Positions 8,944 through 26,594 of a stretch of DNA of 39,614 nucleotides are shown here, piece after piece; positions within the stretch are counted from its first letter, which is position 1, and every line of letters starts with the position of its first letter. A program made the position numbers and the translations under genes. This stretch comes from Octopus bimaculoides (Eukaryota). The notes below the pieces were generated by a model that saw only the letters and a program-made list of their open reading frames with translations, was not told the origin of the DNA and did no database searches. The stretch lies in assembly GCF_001194135.2 (NCBI RefSeq), contig NC_068994.1:45869250-45908863 (forward strand), given 5' to 3'.

Positions 8944-10221
8944 NNNNNNNNNNNNNNNNNNNNNNNNNNNNNNNNNNNNNNNNNNNNNNNNNNNNNNNNN
9001 NNNNNNNNNNNNNNNNNNNNNNNNNNNNNNNNNNNNNNNNNNNNNNNNNNNNNNNNNNNNNNNNNNNNNNNNNNNNNNNNNNNNNNNNNNNNNNNNNNNN
9101 NNNNNNNNNNNNNNNNNNNNNNNNNNNNNNNNNNNNNNNNNNNNNNNNNNNNNNNNNNNNNNNNNNNNNNNNNNNNNNNNNNNNNNNNNNNNNNNNNNNN
9201 NNNNNNNNNNNNNNNNNNNNNNNNNNNNNNNNNNNNNNNNNNNNNNNNNNNNNNNNNNNNNNNNNNNNNNNNNNNNNNNNNNNNNNNNNNNNNNNNNNNN
9301 NNNNNNNNNNNNNNNNNNNNNNNNNNNNNNNNNNNNNNNNNNNNNNNNNNNNNNNNNNNNNNNNNNNNNNNNNNNNNNNNNNNNNNNNNNNNNNNNNNNN
9401 NNNNNNNNNNNNNNNNNNNNNNNNNNNNNNNNNNNNNNNNNNNNNNNNNNNNNNNNNNNNNNNNNNNNNNNNNNNNNNNNNNNNNNNNNNNNNNNNNNNN
9501 NNNNNNNNNNNNNNNNNNNNNNNNNNNNNNNNNNNNNNNNNNNNNNNNNNNNNNNNNNNNNNNNNNNNNNNNNNNNNTATATATATATATATATATACAT
9601 ACAGTATATTTACATATACCCTGACAAACACACGTGTGTGCACACTTATATAGGACGGAACATAAAGGATATGACAATGTAAAAAAGCATATAACGCAGT
9701 AATATCACTTACAATATAACAGAATGCAATAAAAATAAGCATTGATCGCTTCTCACCATTAGCTAAGCCCACCCAGAAATAATTATCCGATACGATATAA
9801 AATTTTACAATAATACATTGGTATAGCTCACCACTTCACAATAAAGCCAGCGATACAGAAAATCCATAAGTTTATATGCATAATGGTGAGTTTATTATGT
9901 ATTAAAGAATGAAAATAATAAAAGGAATGATTTGCGGGAAAATTGTGTATAATGGTATAATAGAATGGTGTGAATGGTACACATTGGTATGGAATGGTTA
10001 TAAGGAACAGGAATTTTATTGGAAATACAAAAAGGAAAACAGTCAGAGAAAATCGAAAAATATAAAAAAGAGAAATGAAATAGAAGGAAGGTGAACAGGA
10101 AAGGAAAAATAGAAAACATATAAAACATAATATTAATAATAATAGTAACAGAATTTTTTAAAAATTAATATGAATGATGATCATGGTGGTGCTGATTAAG
10201 ATAATAATAATAATACTTTCT

Positions 10222-10432
10222 AGTATAGGCACAAGGCCTGAAATTTGGTGCGAGGGGTTAAGTCGTTTACATCGACCCCAATACTCCACTGAGACTTAAT
10301 TTATCGACCCCAAAAAAGATGAAGGGCAAAGTCGACTTCGGCGGAATTTGAACTCAGAAAAGTAAAGTCGGACGAAATGGTGCTAAGCATTTTTGCCCGG
10401 CGAGCTTAACGATTCTGCCAGCTCGCCGCCTT
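10222..10432 (-). mobile_element. tRNA-derived SINE, full length (reference copy of the 11-member family)
   Basis: Minus strand reads TAAGGCGGCGAGCTGGCAGAATCGTTAAG (A box)...GAGTTCAAATTCCGCC (B box)...GGGGTCGATAAATTAAGT...AAATTTCAGGCCTTGTGCCTATACTAGAAAG, then (ATT)n. Confidence 0.9.
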
Positions 10433-10456
10433 AATAATAATAATAGTAATAATAAC

Positions 10457-10539
<83 letters not shown>

Positions 10540-14679: not shown

Positions 14680-15740
14680 TTTAATATGGGGTAGGACCGC
14701 CTTTGGTAGTAATTACAGCTTCAATTCTACGAGGTATGGACTGGTACAGTTTGAATTGTTTCCAAAAGAATTTTTGTCCATTCTTCAGCTAAAATAATCT
14801 CCAGTTCTTATAATGATGATGGTGGAGGATATTGACTCCTTGCTTGTTTTTCTAAATGCACCATAAATGTTCAATAATATTGAGATCTGGGGACTGTGGT
14901 GGCCAGATAAGATGTTCAACGTCACTAGAATGTTTCTCATGCCATTCAGTAACAACTTTAGCTGTGTGAATTGGTGCATTATCATCCTGAAAGATTGCGT
15001 TTCTCTCCGGATATAGTTCCGCAAGCATAGGATGAATTTGATCAGATAAAATGTTTAAATAGTCTTGACTATTAATTCTGCCATGAAGGGAAACTATTGG
15101 GCCGGCGGATTTCCAAGGTATAGCTCCCCCCTCCAGATCATCACAGATCTCCCTCCATGTTTAATAGCTGGAAGAAGTCAGTCGGGGTCAAATGCTTCTT
15201 GTGGCTGTCTCCACACGCATACTCGGCCGGTGGTCAGAAATAAGATAAAGGATGTCTCGTTCGAGAAAATAACATTCTTCCACTGCTCTAGGGACCAATT
15301 CTGTAGGTTTTTACTCCACTCTAAAAGCTTTGCAACGTTTTTTTTTTGAAAATAGTGGTTTTCTGATTGCAGCTTTCCCGTGAAATTCGGCTTTGTGCAG
15401 CTCCCGGCGAACAGTTTTTGTGAAAACTGGGTTCTCGAGGTGGTGATTAACCTCTGCAGTAATTTTGGGGCCTTACTTTTGTGATCGTTTCTAACAATTC
15501 GCGTAAGAGTCTGACGGTCCCTATCTGAAAGTTTTAGTTTTCTTCCGGAGTTTTGTTTCTCAAAGGAGCAAGCGACATTGAGAGCTCTGCGAAGTGAATT
15601 GTACATTAATCATAATAACAGTTCCTTTGAATATTTGTCCCAAGACCAGTACTTTCTAAGGGGTGTGGAAGTCGATCACATCGGCCTTAGTACCCAAATT
15701 GTATTACTTCAACAACCCCGACATTTTGTCCGGCCTGCCA
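14680..15740 (-). mobile_element. Tc1-like transposon; frameshifted transposase pseudogene
   Basis: ORF 15178-15606 has HTH-type SGRKLKLSDRDRQTLTRIVR and WSLEQWKNVIFSNETSF (first D of DDE degraded). A shifted frame near 15000-14850 reads QDDNAPIHT...WPPQSPDLNIIEHLW, typical of Tc1 DD34E. Confidence 0.9.
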
Positions 15741-18949: not shown

Positions 18950-19760
18950 TTGATTCTGTGATGTTTGTTCTGATGTATTTCAGAATTTCATTGACATCTT
19001 TTTTTTCTTTTTTTTTTTTTCGTTTCTTGGTTCAATTTCCATCGATCAACCTTTTTAAGGTTGCAAATAATATCGCTATCGTTCTCCTGTAGTCTTACCT
19101 TTATTCTGTTGTAGGTTGGCTTTTGTTCATCTGCCATATCGCTAATAGGTTTATCGTCTTCTTTTAGATCGTCTATATGTCCCTCATCAAATAAACTACC
19201 ACTGCTCCTTTCCTCTGCTATGAGATTACTCATATTAGTAAGAACTGTATCTTCATTCTTATCTATGCTGCTATTGTTCATGACCCGTCTTTTGATAGCT
19301 TCGAGCTCTACTTCTGTGAAATAACACAATTCTTTTCTTATTGCTCTAGCTTGATCACATGGTCGCTGTTCCGTGAGTTGAAACAATCCCTTTTCTCTCC
19401 AATGATCATATATACGTTGTCGGTAACCCCTAATTTGAGCATCAGTTTCATCTACCGAGTTGCTCAGGTAGTAACACTCTATGACCACAGCATTAATTTG
19501 TTTGTTCCATCTACGCCGTGTGTGGTGGTCCCTTTCTGGATATCGACAGGCTGGAGCCGGACCAGAATCTTTGAGCCTACCGGGTGTATCACTGTCACCG
19601 TCATTGGCTTCAGTTTCATTACCTCTATTATTCACAATATTTTGTTTTTTAATTGTCACTCATATGAGGTAGCGATTATCAGGTTGCGCAATTAACGGTG
19701 TTTTTATTGTGACACCATCACTAGATGTATCATTTTTAGCCCATAAGGAGACTCCACCCG
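18950..19760 (-). mobile_element. R4/Dong-clade non-LTR retrotransposon, N-terminal ORF fragment
   Basis: ORF 18988-19659 contains RRRWNKQINAVVIECYYLS...RGYRQRIYDHWREKGLFQLTEQRPCDQARAIRK, the Myb-like N-terminal block of R4/Dong ORFs. Its 5' side abuts (TAA)n in sense. Confidence 0.75.
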
Positions 19761-19976: not shown

Positions 19977-20469
19977 ATGAGTGCGCTCTTCACAATATGA
20001 TTAATTTTTGGCAGAGTGGTTATCAGGGGTTGTAAGGAGTAAGGGACGGGTGTTATCATTCGCATGTAAGCACTGAAGTGTACAAGAAGTTAATGGACGG
20101 TAATGAGGTGATAATGAGGTGATAAAGACGTGATAATGAGGAGGTAATGAGGCAAAACGGACACGTTAATTAATTTTTGCCACAATCAATAAATACTATG
20201 TGGTTCACTTTGTTCATGCTCACCAGTTCCCGTGTACGGGTACAAAACAACAAAGAAGATTAAGTGTTTCTTCAATAGTGCATGTATCACTCCTGTCTGA
20301 CCCTTCCTTAATGCATCATGGCTGATGTCTCGTAGCGCGGTGCATTTAGGGGCATTGAATGTGATGCATGCATGCATGTATATGAATATATGTATGTGTT
20401 TGAATATACGTAGTCTGATCAATAAGTATCCGGACTGTTGAATCTCAGGGAAATTCAGCATGACACAGA

Positions 20470-20645
20470 GTGTGATAAGGCTGTCCCTTTGAAATACAGA
20501 TTCAACTCGATTTTACCAGCTGAGTGGTCTGAAGCAATGTGAAATAGAGTATCTTGCGTAAGGATACAACGCGCTGTAGGGAATCGAACTCGCGATCTTG
20601 CGATCCTGAATCGGATACTCCAACCACTTAGCCACGCGCCTTCAC
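20470..20645 (-). mobile_element. tRNA-derived SINE with CORE-like domain
   Basis: Minus strand: GCGTGGCTAAGTGGTTGG (A box), GAGTTCGATTCC (B box), CACTCAGCTGGTAAAAT. Confidence 0.75.
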
Positions 20646-20769
20646 TGTATGGTCCACCCTGTTCATATACATGCCACTAGCCCCTCGTAGTAATATCTTT
20701 CAGCTTATTTCTCTTTAAGGTGTCTTTCATATGTGTGTGTGTGTGATTTGAAAATGTCTTTTTCTTTAA

Positions 20770-20960
20770 TTAGGCACCAGCCCAGTAATTTTCCGATGAG
20801 AAGGTGAGTCGATATCATCGACCAAAAAATTTGCTACTTTATTTTATCGAACCATAAATGTCGAAAGAAAAAGTTGACCTCGGTGCAGTTTGAACTCAAA
20901 ATCTAAGGATTTGGAATAAATATCCTGAAGCAATTTTACGACGCTCTAGTGACTCAGTGT
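20770..20960 (-). mobile_element. tRNA-derived SINE (10222 family), degenerate
   Basis: TTAGGCACCAGCCC...GTCGATATCATCGACC...AAAGTTGACCTCGG...TTTGAACTCA. Confidence 0.65.
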
Positions 20961-21104
20961 GCTTGCTGTCTTCATGTACTAGCACTTTGCATGATGGATT
21001 GTACCGTTCATATCGCCTTTGCTCCCAGCACAACCATAATCCAATATTTGAAACCGTATTAAAAATCATAGAAAAATCATAACTAAATAATACTTTCAGA
21101 TGTT

Positions 21105-21304
21105 GATACAAGGCCAGAAACTTCGGAGTAGGGGATAAGTTGATTACATCGACTACAATACTCAAGTGGTACTTATTTTATTGACACCGAAAAGATGAAA
21201 AGTAAAGTCAACCTTGGCGGAATATGAATTCAGAATAGAGCGACGGCGAAATGCCGCTAAACACTTTACCCTGCGCAGAAACGATTCTGCCAACTCACCG
21301 CCTT
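21105..21304 (-). mobile_element. tRNA-derived SINE (10222 family), just 3' of the distal terminal exon
   Basis: AAGGCCAGAAA...GATTACATCGAC...AAAGTCAACCTTGGCGGAAT...ACGATTCTGCCAACTCACCGCCTTA. Confidence 0.8.
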
Positions 21305-21353
21305 ATAAATTATAGTAAAATAATAAAAACAAAGACCATATTTGTTTAACGGG

Positions 21354-21402
21354 TTTATTTCATTCCGTTTCTGCTTTTACTTTATACATGTGTGTGTTTA
21401 TT
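21354..21402 (-). terminator. Two AATAAA poly(A) signals of the distal terminal exon (21397-21402 and 21354-21359)
   Basis: TTTATT on the plus strand, about 70 and 113 nt after the stop; both positions are conserved in the duplicate copy. Confidence 0.65.
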
Positions 21403-21471
21403 GATTTTCTTTACTTCTTTCTTATATCCGAATCACCAGATGAGAGCGACTGGTGTCTCTTCATGTAACGT

Positions 21472-21773
21472 TTAGGAATAAATGCGATCCATACTATCAC
21501 CTAGAAAAGAATTTTGGAAGTTGCCGCCTAACGTTCCTCCATTGGCTTGGGCCAAAGTGATTCTCTGCAACTTCACACTATCTCCCAGCATTTTATAGGA
21601 ATTTGCCATCATCATGTACGCTTTGAATTGAGCGTACATAGATTTAGTCAGCAGTTCCTCTAGGATTTTCTTCTTGTGGTCACTTTTCGATCCTGATTTT
21701 CCGCCATGTCCGCTGTCCATATCGCTATCCCAAAAAGAACCTGGTCTATCGTTGTTCCATCTTTTGTCACCGT
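21472..21773 (-). CDS. Terminal coding exon copy B (distal) of an uncharacterised secreted peptide/protein precursor
   Basis: Acceptor TTTAACAG|AC at 21775-21774; phase 1. Reads (D)GDKRWNNDRPGSFWDSDMDSGHGGKSGSKSDHKKKILEELLTKSMYAQFKAYMMMANSYKMLGDSVKLQRITLAQANGGTLGGNFQNSFLGDSMDRIYS*. No frameshifts. Confidence 0.75.
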
Positions 21774-21793
21774 CTGTTAAATTTTATTGAAAA

Positions 21794-21847
<54 letters not shown>

Positions 21848-21869
21848 TAATAATAATAATAATAATGAT

Positions 21870-22074
21870 TTCAAGTTTTTGCCACAAGGGCTGCTTAGGG
21901 GAAGGGATTAACTCGAATTCATCGACCCCGGTTCGTAACGGTACTTATTTAATAAATACTCCGAAAGGATGGAAAGCAAAGTCTTCGGTGGAATTTGAAC
22001 TCAGAACGTGCAGGCGGACAAAATATCGCTAAGCATTTTGCCCGGCATGCTAACGATCCTACCAGTTTGCTGTC

Positions 22075-22076
<2 letters not shown>
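21870..22076 (-). mobile_element. tRNA-derived SINE (10222 family) embedded in (AAT)n between the two exon copies
   Basis: TTTTGCCACAAGGG...ATCGACCCC...GGAAAGCAAAGTCTTCGGTGGAATTTGAACTCAGAACG...GCTAAGCATTTTGCCCGGCATGCTAACGAT. Confidence 0.85.
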
Positions 22077-22106
<30 letters not shown>

Positions 22107-22159
22107 TATTATTATTATTATTATCATTATTATTATTATAATGATAATAATAATCCTTT

Positions 22160-22344
22160 CTACTAAAAGCACAATATCTGAAATTTGGTAGCGGGGGACT
22201 AGTCTATTACACTGACCCCCCAGTGTTTCACTAATACTTAATTTTTCGACCCCGAAAGGACGTAAGGCAAAGTCGACTTTGGTGTAATTTGAACTCAGAA
22301 AGTAGCGAAATGCCGGGAACTATTCTGCCGATTCACCACCTTAT
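22160..22344 (-). mobile_element. tRNA-derived SINE (10222 family), just 3' of the proximal terminal exon
   Basis: CCTTTCTACTAAAAGCACAA..CTGAAATTTGG...CGACCCCGAAAGG...GGCAAAGTCGAC...ATTCTGCCGATTCACCACCTTA. Confidence 0.8.
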
Positions 22345-22392
22345 AAATTATAATGAAATAATAAAAAACAAAGACCATGTCTATTTAACGGT

Positions 22393-22441
22393 TTTATTTC
22401 ATTCCGTTTCTACTTTTACTTTATAGATGTCTATGTTTATT
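22393..22441 (-). terminator. Two AATAAA poly(A) signals of the proximal terminal exon (22436-22441 and 22393-22398)
   Basis: TTTATT on the plus strand at positions homologous to those of copy B. Confidence 0.65.
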
Positions 22442-22538
22442 TATTTTCTTTACTTCTTTCTTATATCCGAATCACCAGATAAGAGCGACTATTGAAACAC
22501 ATTAGTCTGCATCACAGAACTATATCTTCATGTAACGT

Positions 22539-22840
22539 TTAGGAATAAAACCGATCTAGGCTATCACCTAGAAAGCTATTCCGGAAGTTTCCGCCTAACG
22601 TTCCTCCATTGGCTTGGGCCAAAGCAATTCTCTGCAACTTCACACTTTCTCCCAGCATTTTATAGGAATTTGCCATCATCATGTACGCTTTGAATTGGGC
22701 GTACATAGATTTAGTCAGCAGTTCTTCTAGTACTTTCTTTCTTTGGTTACTTTTCGAGTCGGATTTTCTGCCGTGTTCGCGGTCCATACCACTATCCCAA
22801 AAAGAACCTGGTCCATCGTTGTTCCATCTCTTGTCACCGT
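22539..22840 (-). CDS. Terminal coding exon copy A (proximal) of an uncharacterised secreted peptide/protein precursor
   Basis: Acceptor TTTAACAG|AC at 22842-22841; phase 1 matches the exon 1 donor. Reads (D)GDKRWNNDGPGSFWDSGMDREHGRKSDSKSNQRKKVLEELLTKSMYAQFKAYMMMANSYKMLGESVKLQRIALAQANGGTLGGNFRNSFLGDSLDRFYS*. Confidence 0.85.
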
Positions 22841-22861
22841 CTGTTAAATTTTATTGGAAAG

Positions 22862-22863
<2 letters not shown>

Positions 22864-22925
<62 letters not shown>

Positions 22926-23070
22926 GGAAGAAGAAGAAGAAGAAGAAGAAGAAGAAGAAGAAGAAGAAGAAGAAGAAGAAGAAGAAGAAGAAGAAGAAGA
23001 AGAAGAAGAAGAAGAAGAAGAAGAAGAAGAAGAAGAAGAAGAAGAAGAAGAAGAAGAAGAAGATAATAAT
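22864..23070. repeat. Compound (TAA)n-(GAA)n microsatellite in intron 1, directly upstream of the proximal acceptor
   Basis: (TAA)n at 22864-22925; (GAA)n at about 22927-23062. Confidence 0.95.
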
Positions 23071-23071
23071 A

Positions 23072-23460
23072 AGTAAGCAAACAATGCTGGATCATAGATA
23101 TAGCATGCCCAACTGACAACAAGGTATGCGATAAGGAAGAAAGAAAAGTCGATAGATATGACAGGTTAGCTTGGGAAGTTAAGCAGTTGTGGTCGATGAA
23201 AAAGGTAGCAGTAGTACCAATAATAGTCGGAGTCCTGGGAACAGTGAGTAAAATCTTGAGAAGTACGTGGAACAAATAGTGGCTGCAGTAAGGGTGGTAC
23301 ACTTGCAGAAAACAGCACTGCTTGGAACCGCTCGAATACTCCAGATGGTGCTCGAAAAATAAGGGGTCTTACCATAGTTCCCTGGTAGGGGACAGCTGGC
23401 ACCGCAGTGCATTTCCAGCGATAGAAGATGGGCAAAGATAATAAATAATAATAATAATCA
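23072..23460 (+). mobile_element. R4/Dong-clade non-LTR retrotransposon, 5'-truncated 3' end (restriction-like endonuclease and 3'UTR) with (TAA)n tail
   Basis: Translates as CWIIDIACPTDNKVCDKEERKVDRYDRLAWEVKQLWSMKKVAVVPIIVGVLGTVS, then after a frameshift LQKTALLGTARILQMVLEK*. This is the PD-(D/E)xK-type RLE C-terminus of R4/Dong. Confidence 0.85.
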
Positions 23461-23464
23461 TTTC

Positions 23465-23590
23465 TATTATAGGCACAAGACCTGAAATTTTGGAGGAGTA
23501 GGTAAGTCGATTACGTTGACCCCAGAGCGTAACTGATACTTATTTTATCAACCCTTAAGAGATGAAAGACAAAGTTGACTCGGAACGTAA
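23465..23590 (-). mobile_element. tRNA-derived SINE (10222 family), partial, abutting the mariner fragment
   Basis: TATAGGCACAAGACCTGAAATTTTGG...GTCGATTACGTTGACCCC...GATGAAAGACAAAGTTGAC. Confidence 0.75.
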
Positions 23591-23932
23591 AGACTTCTGA
23601 ATTTTGCAAACCATCTTCTGCAAGTTCTTTCATTCAAACATTCTTTCCCATAAACTGAGTGTATGTTTCGAGTCGCTTCGGCTGCAGAGTTTCCTTTTTT
23701 GTACTCATAAAGCATTATGTGTCTCAAATGTTCTTTAAACACTTCCGTGTTAGAAAGGGTTTTAATCAAAGAAATTTTAATTCTATTATTCTGTAAAATA
23801 ATATTTAATTAGTTTAAATGTACACAAATGCATAAAAATAATTTTTAATTCCATTAGACATACTAAAATACTACTAAATTTCATTCAATTTTAAAAAAGG
23901 TAAAATCGGACAGAACTTATGGGATATCATTA
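23586..23932 (-). mobile_element. mariner-type transposon 5' fragment (TIR and N-terminal HTH of transposase)
   Basis: KEHLRHIMLYEYKKGNSAAEATRNIHSVYGKECLNERTCRRWFAKFRS is the Mos1/SETMAR-like N-terminal HTH. TIR-like ATCCCATAAGTTCTGTCCGAT sits at the right end next to (TA)n. Confidence 0.85.
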
Positions 23933-23954
23933 TATATATATATTATATATGCAT

Positions 23955-24095
23955 GGTTCAAAGATACAGAAAACAAAAGACAAAGACAAGTGAGAGAACA
24001 ATAAGCATCTAAATCAGTTTGACGCTAGGGAGAAAAGGAAAGGTCTTTGACGTTTCGACCCTGCGCTCTTCAACAGAAAGGGACGAGAGAAAAAA
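23955..24095 (-). repeat. Second copy of the 1500-1655 dispersed repeat
   Basis: Minus strand reads CCTTTCTGTTGAAGAGCGCAGGGTCGAAACGTCAAAGAC...AGCGTCAAACT...CACTTGTCTTTGTCTTTTGTTTT. Confidence 0.7.
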
Positions 24096-24249
24096 ACGCG
24101 TCGGTCTTAATGGTTAGGCAAGCTGGAATGGTGAACAGAAGACAAAAGAGAGAAAATAGCAAATTTATTAACGTAGGAAATGTATAAGTTCGAAAGTTCG
24201 AAAAGTTCAGAGGGTACAAGAAGTCGTGGTAGATTTGTATGATGTTGAT

Positions 24250-24333
<84 letters not shown>

Positions 24334-25701
24334 NNNNNNNNNNNNNNNNNNNNNNNNNNNNNNNNNNNNNNNNNNNNNNNNNNNNNNNNNNNNNNNNNNN
24401 NNNNNNNNNNNNNNNNNNNNNNNNNNNNNNNNNNNNNNNNNNNNNNNNNNNNNNNNNNNNNNNNNNNNNNNNNNNNNNNNNNNNNNNNNNNNNNNNNNNN
24501 NNNNNNNNNNNNNNNNNNNNNNNNNNNNNNNNNNNNNNNNNNNNNNNNNNNNNNNNNNNNNNNNNNNNNNNNNNNNNNNNNNNNNNNNNNNNNNNNNNNN
24601 NNNNNNNNNNNNNNNNNNNNNNNNNNNNNNNNNNNNNNNNNNNNNNNNNNNNNNNNNNNNNNNNNNNNNNNNNNNNNNNNNNNNNNNNNNNNNNNNNNNN
24701 NNNNNNNNNNNNNNNNNNNNNNNNNNNNNNNNNNNNNNNNNNNNNNNNNNNNNNNNNNNNNNNNNNNNNNNNNNNNNNNNNNNNNNNNNNNNNNNNNNNN
24801 NNNNNNNNNNNNNNNNNNNNNNNNNNNNNNNNNNNNNNNNNNNNNNNNNNNNNNNNNNNNNNNNNNNNNNNNNNNNNNNNNNNNNNNNNNNNNNNNNNNN
24901 NNNNNNNNNNNNNNNNNNNNNNNNNNNNNNNNNNNNNNNNNNNNNNNNNNNNNNNNNNNNNNNNNNNNNNNNNNNNNNNNNNNNNNNNNNNNNNNNNNNN
25001 NNNNNNNNNNNNNNNNNNNNNNNNNNNNNNNNNNNNNNNNNNNNNNNNNNNNNNNNNNNNNNNNNNNNNNNNNNNNNNNNNNNNNNNNNNNNNNNNNNNN
25101 NNNNNNNNNNNNNNNNNNNNNNNNNNNNNNNNNNNNNNNNNNNNNNNNNNNNNNNNNNNNNNNNNNNNNNNNNNNNNNNNNNNNNNNNNNNNNNNNNNNN
25201 NNNNNNNNNNNNNNNNNNNNNNNNNNNNNNNNNNNNNNNNNNNNNNNNNNNNNNNNNNNNNNNNNNNNNNNNNNNNNNNNNNNNNNNNNNNNNNNACATA
25301 TATATATATATATATATATACATACATTCATACATTCATACATACATACATACATAAATACATACATACAGACATATTACATATATTATATTATATATTA
25401 CATTCTGCGGATTCGCGATAAGAAATTCGCTCCACCGGCTAATCATTTCCGGGTATATATATTGATATATGTGTGTGTATGTGTGCGTGTGTGCATGTAT
25501 GTGTCTTTCTGTCCCTTTATCTGCCTGACTGTATGTATTATGCATCTAATTCTCTATTTGTGCACGCGTATATATATATATATATATATACATGCGTGTA
25601 TGTGTATAAATATATATATATATGTATGTATGTTTGTATGTATGTATATGTAAGCATATGGACACATCCTAACGCACATACAAACTGGAAATATAACTTA
25701 C

Positions 25702-25783
25702 CGTATCCACCTAAGAAATTGAATGCTTCAGATGTCAGCACAGACGCAGCTAGAAAGCAGAATAGAATGCTTAACGAGTTCAT
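25702..25783 (-). CDS. First coding exon: signal peptide and N-terminal peptide of the secreted precursor
   Basis: ATG at 25783; MNSLSILFCFLAASVLTSEA|FNFLGGY with hydrophobic core and S-E-A cleavage site. Ends TAC G|GTAAGT, a strong phase-1 donor; G+AC gives Asp in frame with both terminal exons. Confidence 0.85.
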
Positions 25784-25820
25784 ACTGAGAGCAGTGTTGA
25801 TTGTATTCGAACCAATGAAC

Positions 25821-25869
25821 GAATGATGGATAATGATGCGATTATGACTGTATTTATAGTAGTTACGCA
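25821..25869 (-). promoter_or_regulatory. Core promoter: TATAAATA (25858-25851), Inr-like TCATTC (25826-25821), bZIP-like TTGCGTAA (25869-25862)
   Basis: TATA box lies about 31-34 nt upstream of an initiator-like element and about 75 nt upstream of the ATG. Confidence 0.6.
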
Positions 25870-26594
25870 ATAGACCGTCCTATTAGATAAAACAATATTA
25901 GCAGGTAATTCCTGCTAGACGAAATATACATATGATAATATATATGTAATATGTACTGAGATTAATGTCGGACAGGTGAGTCAACAAAGCAGATGGTAAT
26001 TTGTTGGTAATGGAGTATAAACAAACTAGTTTATAGATCGGTTGGGAGAAGGGATGAAGAAAACAGACGATCAGTTTGTGGTGGGTGAAGAATGAACAAA
26101 ACAGACGATAAATAGAAAAGCGAACGATGGGGAAGGAGAGACAATGACAAGATAAAGAGTGAAGGAGAGAAAGAGTGAGGTTAAGGGATCACAGGAACTA
26201 AAGTCTTTTGTAAACAGTATCCCATCATATAGTTTAAATTGTAAATAGAAAAAACTATTCACGGACATTTTACATTATACACACTAATTGATACTTTCAA
26301 ATAGTTTCCTTCTGCTTATTTTTGTTTTAACTGCCTATGATTAAGTGTAGAACTTTTACTTCGTAACGTAGTTGAGAATTTCTCACGCTACAGCATTCTT
26401 TTTCGAGTACTACTGTATTCTGAACATGTGGCACTGGTCTAGAATCTTACAGTTATGTTAGAGTTTACTATATAGAACATTGCAAACGTGTACGGCACAT
26501 GAATCATTTGCCTGTGGTGTTACACTGTGTACCATCTCATTTCACAATACCCTTCTAGATACTGCATTGCTAATCCCTTGTATATGTGGCATTG

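What the first reader, a model, noticed from the sequence alone, without database searches (positions are those of the whole stretch)
21300..22865. Tandemly duplicated terminal exon: two alternative last exons sharing one signal-peptide exon
Seen: two copies 1067 bp apart, both with the same acceptor (AATAAAATTTAACAG|ACGGTGAC), intact frame, same stop position and two poly(A) signals each. No second promoter or signal-peptide exon lies between them, only SINEs and (AAT)n. The proteins differ at 15 of 100 residues, 10 of them in the first 38 residues; the 27-aa core is invariant. Synonymous changes occur (GAA/GAG, GCC/GCT, GGA/GGC, AAG/AAA, and an AGC/TCT serine codon switch). The 3'UTRs differ by an indel of about 28 nt while the CDSs have none. 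Inference: both copies are under purifying selection and are used as mutually exclusive last exons, giving one secreted-peptide gene two cargo variants.
Basis: partly seen in the sequence, partly recalled or inferred. Interest (0 to 1): 0.85.

Follow-up and report, generated by a model that had tools for sequence, protein, structure and literature searches.

The report
Duplicated alternative last exon, octopus gene
A small octopus-only secreted-protein gene carries two tandem copies of its protein-coding last exon behind one shared signal-peptide exon, which is a real, conserved but ordinary case of alternative last exons that public annotation already lists as isoforms X1 and X2.

Summary
On the minus strand, two 302-nt coding exons lie 1067 bp apart (22840-22539 and 21773-21472). 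They have the same acceptor, phase, length and stop. They differ at 15 of 99 residues, and the 27-aa core is invariant.

The shared signal-peptide exon is at 25783-25702. The interpretation matches public annotation: Octopus bimaculoides LOC106884277 isoform X2 is exon 1 plus the proximal copy, and X1 is exon 1 plus the distal copy.

Gap-free assemblies of O. sinensis and O. vulgaris hold the same two copies, with proximal matching proximal and distal matching distal. That rules out a mis-assembly and a hidden first exon. A spliced octopus cDNA, found as a contaminant in a Campylobacter assembly, joins exon 1 directly to the distal-type exon.

The selection claim holds only in part:
- **Proximal lineage:** constrained (omega about 0.3).
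- **Distal lineage:** not distinguishable from neutral (omega about 0.86). It stays intact and is transcribed.
- **Gene conversion:** it has partly homogenised the copies.

Use of the proximal exon rests on gene models only. The protein belongs to an octopod-restricted orphan family, and its function is unknown. This is a new member of a known kind, of low to moderate interest.

The parts
25851..25858 (-). TATAAATA box upstream of exon 1 (putative core promoter)
   Evidence: Read directly. It lies about 42 nt upstream of the first base covered by the cDNA L005 (window 25809). Its function is inferred.
25702..25809 (-). Exon 1: at least 26 nt of 5'UTR, then ATG at 25783, 27 codons (MNSLSILFCFLAASVLTSEAFNFLGGY) and 1 nt of a split codon. 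Donor is G|GTAAGT, phase 1.
   Evidence: tblastn finds one hit at 25783-25703 and no other copy in the window. Sequence read. cDNA L005 nt 1-108 match 25809-25702 at 96%. It is the N-terminus of both P0001 and P0002.
22841..25701 (-). Intron 1 up to the proximal exon. It contains a 962-N assembly gap (24334-25295), a mariner HTH_48 fragment (23551-23769) and (GAA)n/(AAT)n at 22856-23070.
   Evidence: The orthologous O. sinensis intron is 6.8 kb, has no gap and has no second exon 1.
22539..22840 (-). Proximal terminal exon (copy A), coding part: 2 nt of the split codon, 99 codons and TAA. Used in isoform X2 (P0001).
   Evidence: Orthologous to O. sinensis L001:16882-17180 and O. vulgaris L006:17722-18023.
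22370..22538 (-). 3'UTR of copy A, with AATAAA at 22445-22436 (two overlapping) and 22398-22393 and a T-rich downstream element. The end coordinate is approximate.
   Evidence: The poly(A)-signal block is conserved in position in all Octopus copies and in a third octopod.
21774..22369 (-). Spacer, which acts as an intron for the distal isoform: SINE-like element (core at 22281-22299), (AAT)n/(ATT)n at 22060-22165, second SINE-like element (core at 21987-22005), (ATT)n at 21790-21870.
   Evidence: No N. No credible first exon. Collinear with the O. sinensis spacer at 86% over 1140 nt.
21472..21773 (-). Distal terminal exon (copy B), coding part: same acceptor, phase, length and stop position as copy A. 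Used in isoform X1 (P0002).
   Evidence: Orthologous to L001:18037-18338 and L006:18873-19174. The distal-type exon is spliced to exon 1 in cDNA L005.
21330..21471 (-). 3'UTR of copy B, with AATAAA at 21402-21397 and 21359-21354. It is 28 nt shorter than that of copy A. The end coordinate is approximate.
21170..21329 (-). SINE-like element downstream of copy B, in register with the one downstream of copy A, so it is part of the duplicated unit.
   Evidence: (families D6-D8).

Best explanation
This is a two-exon gene on the minus strand, Octopus bimaculoides LOC106884277. It encodes a 127-aa secreted protein with no cysteines, from a family seen only in octopods.

Exon 1 supplies the 5'UTR, the signal peptide and the first residues of the mature protein. 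It ends in phase 1. The second exon carries the other 99 codons, the stop, the 3'UTR and the poly(A) signals. A block of about 0.7-1.1 kb holding this second exon, a flanking SINE and a microsatellite was duplicated in tandem. This happened before O. bimaculoides and the O. sinensis/O. vulgaris lineage split.

Each copy kept its acceptor, phase, reading frame, stop and poly(A) signals. The single exon-1 donor can therefore be joined to either copy:
- Splicing and cleavage at the proximal copy gives isoform X2.

The two exons exclude each other by construction, because each ends in a poly(A) site.

The copies evolve unevenly. The proximal one is constrained. The distal one changes fast. Gene conversion homogenises parts of them from time to time.

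Shown here: the duplication, its conservation and orthology, both intact frames, a shared exon 1, and a spliced transcript for the distal type. Inferred: use of the proximal exon (gene models only), any regulated or tissue-specific choice, secretion, and the protein's function.
For: - Anatomy.
- Gene models: two public models share the start. One ends at the copy A stop and the other at the copy B stop.
- Other species: O. sinensis and O. vulgaris have both copies intact, in gap-free sequence, with one exon 1.
- Orthology: the copy A unit matches the sinensis proximal unit (86% over 1140 nt, 1326 bits). The copy B unit matches the distal unit (88% over 955 nt, 1239 bits). Cross matches are weaker (716 and 690 bits).
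- Age: N-terminal-half dS is 0.14 between orthologues and 0.33-0.44 between paralogues. The SINE flank differs by 0.23-0.33 between paralogues and 0.08-0.12 between orthologues. The duplication is therefore about 2-3 times older than the species split.
- Transcript: cDNA L005 nt 1-108 match exon 1 at 97%. Nt 108-557 match the distal exon at 95.6-97.3% without gaps, and the proximal exon at only 85%.
- Proximal lineage: 13.5 synonymous against 16.5 non-synonymous changes, omega about 0.30, p = 0.0009. Copy A also has an AGC serine codon where all other copies have TCT.
- Distal lineage: an intact frame in both species lineages has a joint probability of roughly 0.006 under strict neutrality (0.18 x 0.035).
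- Indels: the only coding indel in any copy is an in-frame 3-nt deletion in the O. sinensis proximal copy.
- Poly(A) signals: the blocks are conserved in position in every copy.
Against: - No transcript using the proximal exon was seen here. Its use rests on predicted models in one species.
- No proximal-type protein exists in the 5.8-billion-protein collection for O. sinensis or O. vulgaris. Their annotations use only the distal copy.
- The distal lineage has omega about 0.86 (11 synonymous, 38 non-synonymous; p = 0.38), so dN/dS alone shows no constraint.
- Gene conversion is evident. The O. sinensis distal C-terminus equals its proximal copy, while O. vulgaris and the cDNA differ. There are 7 species-pattern against 12 orthology-pattern sites. 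The bimaculoides 3'UTRs are closer to each other than to their orthologues. Conversion could help keep a little-used copy intact and weakens pairwise A-B inference.
- All counts are small and the parsimony tree ignores conversion.
Confidence: 0.75

Rival explanations
1. Only one copy matters. The distal exon is the working last exon in all sampled tissues. The proximal copy is a rarely used or unused duplicate that prediction pipelines picked up and that gene conversion keeps intact.
For: Every transcript-level or annotation record outside O. bimaculoides is of the distal type: P0003, P0009 and the cDNA P0010/L005. Gene conversion between the copies is evident.
Against: The proximal lineage carries the clearer signal of purifying selection (omega about 0.30, p = 0.0009) and keeps the ancestral core residues. 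Its N-terminal half shows orthologue-specific divergence, so conversion did not maintain that part, yet it has no stop or frameshift. Two records of the proximal isoform exist for O. bimaculoides, one in RefSeq and one in UniProt from the GenBank submission.
Confidence: 0.17
2. The distal copy is a decaying duplicate. It is still transcribed, but its protein is no longer under selection.
For: Distal-lineage omega is about 0.86, and there are non-conservative changes in the otherwise invariant core in O. sinensis and O. vulgaris (YAQF to YNQF, KLQ to KSQ, GGN to GSN).
Against: It is the isoform captured as spliced cDNA and chosen by three annotations. The frame, stop position, acceptor and poly(A) blocks are intact in all four distal sequences. 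The joint neutral expectation for that is about 0.006. A high omega also fits a fast-evolving secreted protein.
Confidence: 0.05
3. The duplication is an assembly artefact (two haplotypes or paralogues collapsed in tandem), or there are two separate genes and copy B has its own unassembled first exon.
For: The window comes from a gappy assembly (4368 N), and a 962-N gap lies in intron 1.
Against: There is no N between the copies. The same tandem pair, with orthologous flanks and spacer, is present in gap-free O. sinensis and O. vulgaris assemblies with one exon 1. The cDNA joins that exon 1 to the distal-type exon. The copies differ by 11% and pair with different orthologues, which two haplotypes would not do.
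Confidence: 0.02

Closest known systems
Tandemly duplicated, mutually exclusive terminal exons, for example the eight homologous terminal-exon clusters of Drosophila pipe (review PMC9013439)
   Same: Homologous last exons arranged in tandem behind shared upstream exons. One is chosen per transcript. The origin is tandem exon duplication.
   Different: There are two copies here, not eight. The whole mature protein apart from its first residues is swapped, rather than one domain. The gene is an orphan secreted-protein gene. No competing RNA structure or regulator has been identified.
CHH/CHH-L and ITP/ITP-L peptide-hormone genes of crustaceans and insects (PMC7560641; PMC11035804)
   Same: One signal-peptide-bearing 5' part is combined with alternative 3' coding exons, so one gene gives two secreted products.
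   Different: In those genes exon 3 is included or skipped ahead of exon 4, and the products share 40 mature residues but differ strongly after that. Here the two exons are close homologues (85% aa identity), each with its own poly(A) site. The protein has no cysteines and is not a member of the CHH superfamily.
Vertebrate CALCA gene, calcitonin and CGRP (my own knowledge: Amara et al. 1982; not checked with a tool)
   Same: The choice between a proximal coding exon with its own poly(A) site and a distal one gives two secreted peptides from one signal-peptide exon. Tissue-specific choice is the classic mechanism.
   Different: Calcitonin and CGRP are very divergent peptides with different receptors. 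Here the conserved core is identical in both isoforms. There is no sequence relationship.
Mutually exclusive internal exons derived from tandem exon duplication (PMC9741552 and PMC8373072, listed)
   Same: The duplicated exons are homologous, equal in length and equal in phase, so the isoforms differ only by substitutions.
   Different: Those are internal exons that need a mechanism to prevent double inclusion. Terminal exons exclude each other automatically.

Membership tests
Alternative last exons from tandem exon duplication | Two homologous exons in tandem, in the same orientation, within one transcription unit | tested here: met
   Copies are 89% identical over 300 nt with spacing 1067. 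The duplicated block covers 718 aligned columns.
Alternative last exons from tandem exon duplication | Each copy has its own 3' splice site in the same phase, its own stop codon and its own poly(A) signals | tested here: met
   Identical acceptor TTTAACAG|AC, 99 codons plus TAA in each, and AATAAA blocks conserved in position.
Alternative last exons from tandem exon duplication | One shared upstream exon and donor, with no first exon or promoter between the copies | tested here: met
   Each of the window, L001 and L006 has a single exon 1. The spacer has no N and no credible ATG-to-donor exon.
Alternative last exons from tandem exon duplication | A transcript joining the shared exon to the distal copy | tested here: met
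   Spliced cDNA L005 from an O. vulgaris-group animal joins exon 1 to the distal-type exon. The O. bimaculoides X1 model agrees.
Alternative last exons from tandem exon duplication | A transcript joining the shared exon to the proximal copy | tested here: inconclusive
   Only predicted models exist (XP_014791055 and A0A0L8I3Z1). No proximal-type protein or cDNA appears in any collection searched.
Alternative last exons from tandem exon duplication | Regulated (tissue- or stage-specific) choice between the exons | not testable with these tools
   No expression data were available.
Neuropeptide or prohormone precursor | N-terminal signal peptide | tested here: inconclusive
   By inspection only: a hydrophobic stretch LSILFCFLAASVL followed by SEA|F, which fits the -3/-1 rule. 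AlphaFold models residues 3-23 as a helix at low confidence. No signal-peptide predictor was available.
Neuropeptide or prohormone precursor | Conserved peptides flanked by dibasic cleavage sites, often with a Gly amidation signal | tested here: inconclusive
   A KR/KK site after FNFLGGYDGD is conserved in Octopus and Argonauta, and RKK/KKK precedes the helix. No conserved Gly-dibasic amidation site is present. The O. vulgaris genome lacks FNFLGGY through a 15-nt in-frame deletion.
Neuropeptide or prohormone precursor | Homology to a described peptide family | tested here: not met
   No Pfam hit at E <= 10. No PDB hit. Profile searches of 1.84 and 5.8 billion proteins return only Octopus and Argonauta proteins, all uncharacterised. 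No paper contains the accessions or the peptide strings.
CHH/ITP superfamily | Six conserved cysteines and the CHH fold | tested here: not met
   The mature protein has 0 cysteines and no Pfam match.

The most novel reading that the evidence does not exclude
This octopod-only family of two-exon genes (signal exon plus cargo exon) may diversify mainly by duplicating single exons rather than whole genes.

- Octopus has a conserved pair of cargo exons that evolve unevenly: a constrained proximal copy and a fast distal copy with omega near 1.
- Argonauta hians has a second cargo exon 3 kb downstream. It is in phase but very diverged, and it lacks the 15-aa centre of the core.
- An Argonauta paralogue has instead duplicated its signal-peptide exon.

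If the fast distal exon is under diversifying selection and the choice between exons is regulated, this would be an exon-cassette system for varying a secreted effector, as seen in venom, immune or reproductive peptides.
Probability: 0.2. Interest if true: 0.5.

Novelty: new member of a known kind. Interest (0 to 1): 0.3.

Why it matters
It matters modestly. It is a clean, datable example of how tandem duplication of a terminal exon creates alternative isoforms of a lineage-restricted secreted protein. The duplication arose before Octopus species split, both copies were retained, they evolve at different rates, and gene conversion continues between them.

Three practical points follow:
- The O. 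sinensis and O. vulgaris annotations lack a possible proximal isoform.
- Argonauta hians has an unannotated candidate alternative exon.
- A 'Campylobacter fetus' protein record is really an octopus transcript.

None of this opens a long-standing question. The isoform pair itself has been in RefSeq and UniProt since the 2015 genome.

Tried and rejected
- **Family identity:** Pfam, a PDB sequence search, a profile search of 1.84 billion representatives and a wider-profile search of 5.8 billion proteins found only uncharacterised octopod proteins. One repeat protein (P0007) I judged spurious.
- **Structure:** the AlphaFold model was too weak to compare with structure libraries (mean pLDDT 51.5, one long helix at 56-104), so I ran no fold search. 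The hydrophobic moment of the helix is unremarkable.
- **More transcripts or genomic copies:** scans of bacterial genome contigs and metagenome contigs found nothing.
- **Literature:** searches by locus name, accession and peptide string found nothing.
- **Structured RNA:** the Rfam scan of 20000-26500 found nothing.
- **Hidden first exon in the spacer:** one chance candidate with a poor donor, rejected.
- **Looping-out by microsatellites:** the bimaculoides spacer has an (AAT)n/(ATT)n inverted repeat that could pair with the (ATT)n tracts upstream of the exons. The O. sinensis spacer has only (ATT)n/(GTT)n (alignment), so the feature is not conserved and I dropped it.
- **Family members elsewhere:** the paralogues P0006 and P0008 are not in the window. 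No counterpart of the diverged Argonauta exon lies downstream of copy B in any Octopus locus.
Full report
**Observation.** The feature is on the minus strand. The repeat finder reports a 300-nt direct repeat (21458-21757 and 22525-22824, 89% identical, spacing 1067). It also reports a 127-nt repeat (92% identical, spacing 1039) covering the 3'UTRs. Read in gene orientation, both copies start after the same acceptor, AATAAAATTTAACAG|ACGGTGAC. Both run for 2 nt of a split codon plus 99 codons to a TAA at the same position. Copy A, the proximal one, is 22840-22539. Copy B, the distal one, is 21773-21472.

The copies differ at 33 of 302 nt and 15 of 99 residues. Ten of those residues lie in the first 36. 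The core LEELLTKSMYAQFKAYMMMANSYKMLG is identical. The 3'UTRs differ by a 28-nt indel and the coding parts by none. Minus-strand AATAAA sites follow both stops. The hexamer is common in this AT-rich window, so the useful point is that these sites are conserved in position across copies and species. The duplicated block is wider than the reported interval: 22925-22235 against 21858-21170. It includes the upstream (ATT)n tract and a SINE-like element downstream of each 3'UTR.

**Gene model and public annotation.** A protein search with the exon translation returned two Octopus bimaculoides proteins of 127 aa. They are 'uncharacterized protein LOC106884277' isoform X2 (100% to copy A) and isoform X1 (100% to copy B). 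Both start with MNSLSILFCFLAASVLTSEAFNFLGGY. That sequence is encoded once in the window, at 25783-25703. It is followed by one more base and a GTAAGT donor in phase 1, and it has a TATAAATA box upstream. The split codon G|AC gives Asp with either copy.

In the public chromosome record (CM046614.1), two coding models share the start and span 3245 and 4312 nt. Those are exactly the distances from 25783 to the two stops. The same two proteins are UniProt A0A0L8I3Z1 and A0A0L8I541. I found no paper that mentions the gene.

**Not an artefact, and not two genes.**
- The 765 nt between the copy A stop and the copy B acceptor contain no N and no exon-1-like sequence. They hold only one chance ATG-to-GT candidate with a poor donor.
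- The gap-free loci of O. sinensis (L001) and O. vulgaris (L006) each have one exon 1 and two intact cargo exons about 1.15 kb apart.
- The copy A unit with the whole spacer aligns to the sinensis proximal unit (86% over 1140 nt). The copy B unit with its downstream flank aligns to the distal unit (88% over 955 nt). The cross matches are clearly weaker.
- A 557-nt contig in a Campylobacter fetus assembly, annotated there as a hypothetical protein, is an octopus cDNA. Its nt 1-108 match exon 1. Its nt 108-557 match the distal exon of O. vulgaris at 97.3% without gaps, and the proximal exon at 85%. So the shared exon 1 is spliced to the distal-type exon, skipping the proximal one, in at least one Octopus species.

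**Age and selection.** In the N-terminal half of the exon, dS is 0.14 between orthologues and 0.33-0.44 between paralogues. In the SINE flank, divergence is 0.08-0.12 between orthologues and 0.23-0.33 between paralogues. The duplication is therefore about two to three times older than the bimaculoides-sinensis split.

The pairwise A-B omega is 0.26 (15 synonymous, 18 non-synonymous changes; p = 0.0008). The two lineages behave differently, however:

| Lineage | Synonymous | Non-synonymous | Omega | p |
|---|---|---|---|---|
| Proximal | 13.5 | 16.5 | about 0.30 | 0.0009 |
| Distal | 11 | 38 | about 0.86 | 0.38 |

The distal copy still looks maintained. Given the substitutions it has taken and the indel rate of the flanks, an intact frame has a probability of about 0.18 in bimaculoides and 0.035 in the sinensis/vulgaris lineage if it were neutral. 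The only coding indel anywhere is an in-frame 3-nt deletion in the O. sinensis proximal copy.

The N-terminal spacer (residues 8-36 of the exon) evolves almost neutrally in both lineages, with omega 0.8-0.9. That explains why the differences cluster there.

Gene conversion complicates all of this:
- The O. sinensis distal C-terminus (HNSFLGGSMDRFYS) equals its own proximal copy, whereas O. vulgaris and the cDNA have HNPFLGGSLDRHFS.
- Site patterns are 12 orthology-type, 7 species-type and 2 other. The species-type sites cluster from the mid coding region into the 3'UTR.
- The bimaculoides 3'UTRs are closer to each other (0.090) than to their orthologues.

**The wider family.** Profile searches found only octopod proteins: the orthologue in Argonauta hians, a paralogue 43 kb away in Argonauta (P0006), and a paralogue in O. 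bimaculoides and O. sinensis (P0008, P0011). All have the same two-exon plan. There is no Pfam domain, no solved relative, no cysteine, and a low-confidence model with one long helix.

Argonauta has one conserved cargo exon. About 3.1 kb downstream it has a second, much diverged one (L002:14444-14637). It has the same TTATTAAC..AAG|ACGG acceptor, the same phase, 63 open codons, a stop and then AATAAA. Its flanks are collinear with those of the first copy. Either the duplication is older than Octopus and conversion has kept the Octopus copies alike, or the exon was duplicated twice independently. The Argonauta paralogue has a tandem duplicate of its first exon instead.

**How it most likely works.** One promoter and one donor serve two competing acceptor and poly(A) units. 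Use of the proximal unit ends the transcript there and gives X2. Bypassing it lets the polymerase reach the distal unit, and exon 1 is spliced to it, giving X1. The two exons exclude each other automatically because both are terminal.

Every record outside O. bimaculoides is of the distal type. This suggests the proximal unit is often skipped in the tissues sampled, so its use is probably weak or restricted. That step is inference.

The two proteins share the signal peptide, the N-terminal FNFLGGYD and the identical helical core. They differ in the spacer and at five C-terminal residues. The functional difference between the isoforms, if there is one, is probably small, or it lies in the 3'UTRs. 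The protein's function is unknown. A processed secreted peptide is possible, since the KR/KK and RKK sites are conserved, but it is not demonstrated.

**Comparison with what is known, and novelty.** Tandem exon duplication giving mutually exclusive exons is well described, including terminal exons such as those of Drosophila pipe (PMC9013439). Peptide-hormone genes that pair one signal-peptide 5' part with alternative 3' coding exons are classic. Examples are CHH/CHH-L and ITP/ITP-L (PMC7560641) and calcitonin/CGRP (my own knowledge). The octopus gene works like these but belongs to none of those protein families. I rate it a new member of a known kind. The isoform pair itself is already annotated. 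What this work adds is the cross-species orthology, the unequal rates, the conversion tracts, the transcript evidence and the Argonauta exon.

**Limits.** I could not access expression data, so use of the proximal exon and any regulation are unverified. The substitution counts are small. The parsimony tree ignores conversion. The third octopod (Logan contigs L003 and L004) is unidentified, and its contig is too short to show whether it has a second copy.

Noticed in passing
L005 (GCA_016612875.1, JAENPS010000051.1, 557 nt): A contig in a Campylobacter fetus subsp. venerealis assembly, annotated as hypothetical protein MBK3487724.1, is a spliced Octopus mRNA made of exon 1 and the distal-type exon. 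It is a eukaryotic cDNA contaminant in a bacterial genome record.
   Followed up: yes
L002:14444-14637 (Argonauta hians): A second, highly diverged tandem copy of the cargo exon lies 3.1 kb downstream of the annotated one. It has the same acceptor motif and phase, 63 open codons, a stop and then AATAAA. It lacks the TKSMYAQFKAYMMMA centre of the core and is not annotated.
   Followed up: partly
L007:10001-10147 and 10374-10520 (Argonauta hians paralogue P0006): In the paralogous gene the signal-peptide first exon is tandemly duplicated (86-88% aa identity to the query) and the cargo exon is single.
   Followed up: no
L006:~10100-10114 (O. vulgaris exon 1): The O. vulgaris genome has a 15-nt in-frame deletion that removes FNFLGGY at the end of exon 1 (SEAFD|D...). 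O. sinensis, O. bimaculoides, Argonauta and the contaminant cDNA all keep it.
   Followed up: partly
L001:18290-18335 compared with L001:17135-17177: The O. sinensis distal exon carries the C-terminal sequence of its own proximal exon, unlike O. vulgaris and the cDNA. This looks like a recent gene-conversion tract that arose after the sinensis-vulgaris split.
   Followed up: partly
L001:~16995: The O. sinensis proximal exon has an in-frame 3-nt deletion inside the otherwise invariant core (LEELL becomes LELL). It is absent from O. vulgaris.
   Followed up: no
window 22856-23070: A long (AAT)n tract followed by about 50 units of (GAA)n lies directly upstream of the proximal acceptor. On the transcript this reads as a (CUU)n polypyrimidine tract followed by (AUU)n. 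O. sinensis has only AAT/ATT repeats there.
   Followed up: partly
window 24334-25295: A 962-N assembly gap sits in intron 1. The intron is 2.9 kb here and 6.8 kb in gap-free O. sinensis, so several kb may be missing from this assembly.
   Followed up: partly
window 23551-23769 (-): A mariner/Mos1 transposase HTH_48 fragment (Pfam E = 1e-23) lies inside intron 1. Two other ORFs, at 15181-15606 (-) and 18991-19659 (-), have no Pfam match.
   Followed up: partly
window 22850-22855 and 21783-21788 (-): An AATAAA hexamer sits 9 nt upstream of the acceptor AG of both copies. It is also present before the distal copy in O. sinensis and O. vulgaris, but not before their proximal copy. Its significance is unknown.
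   Followed up: no
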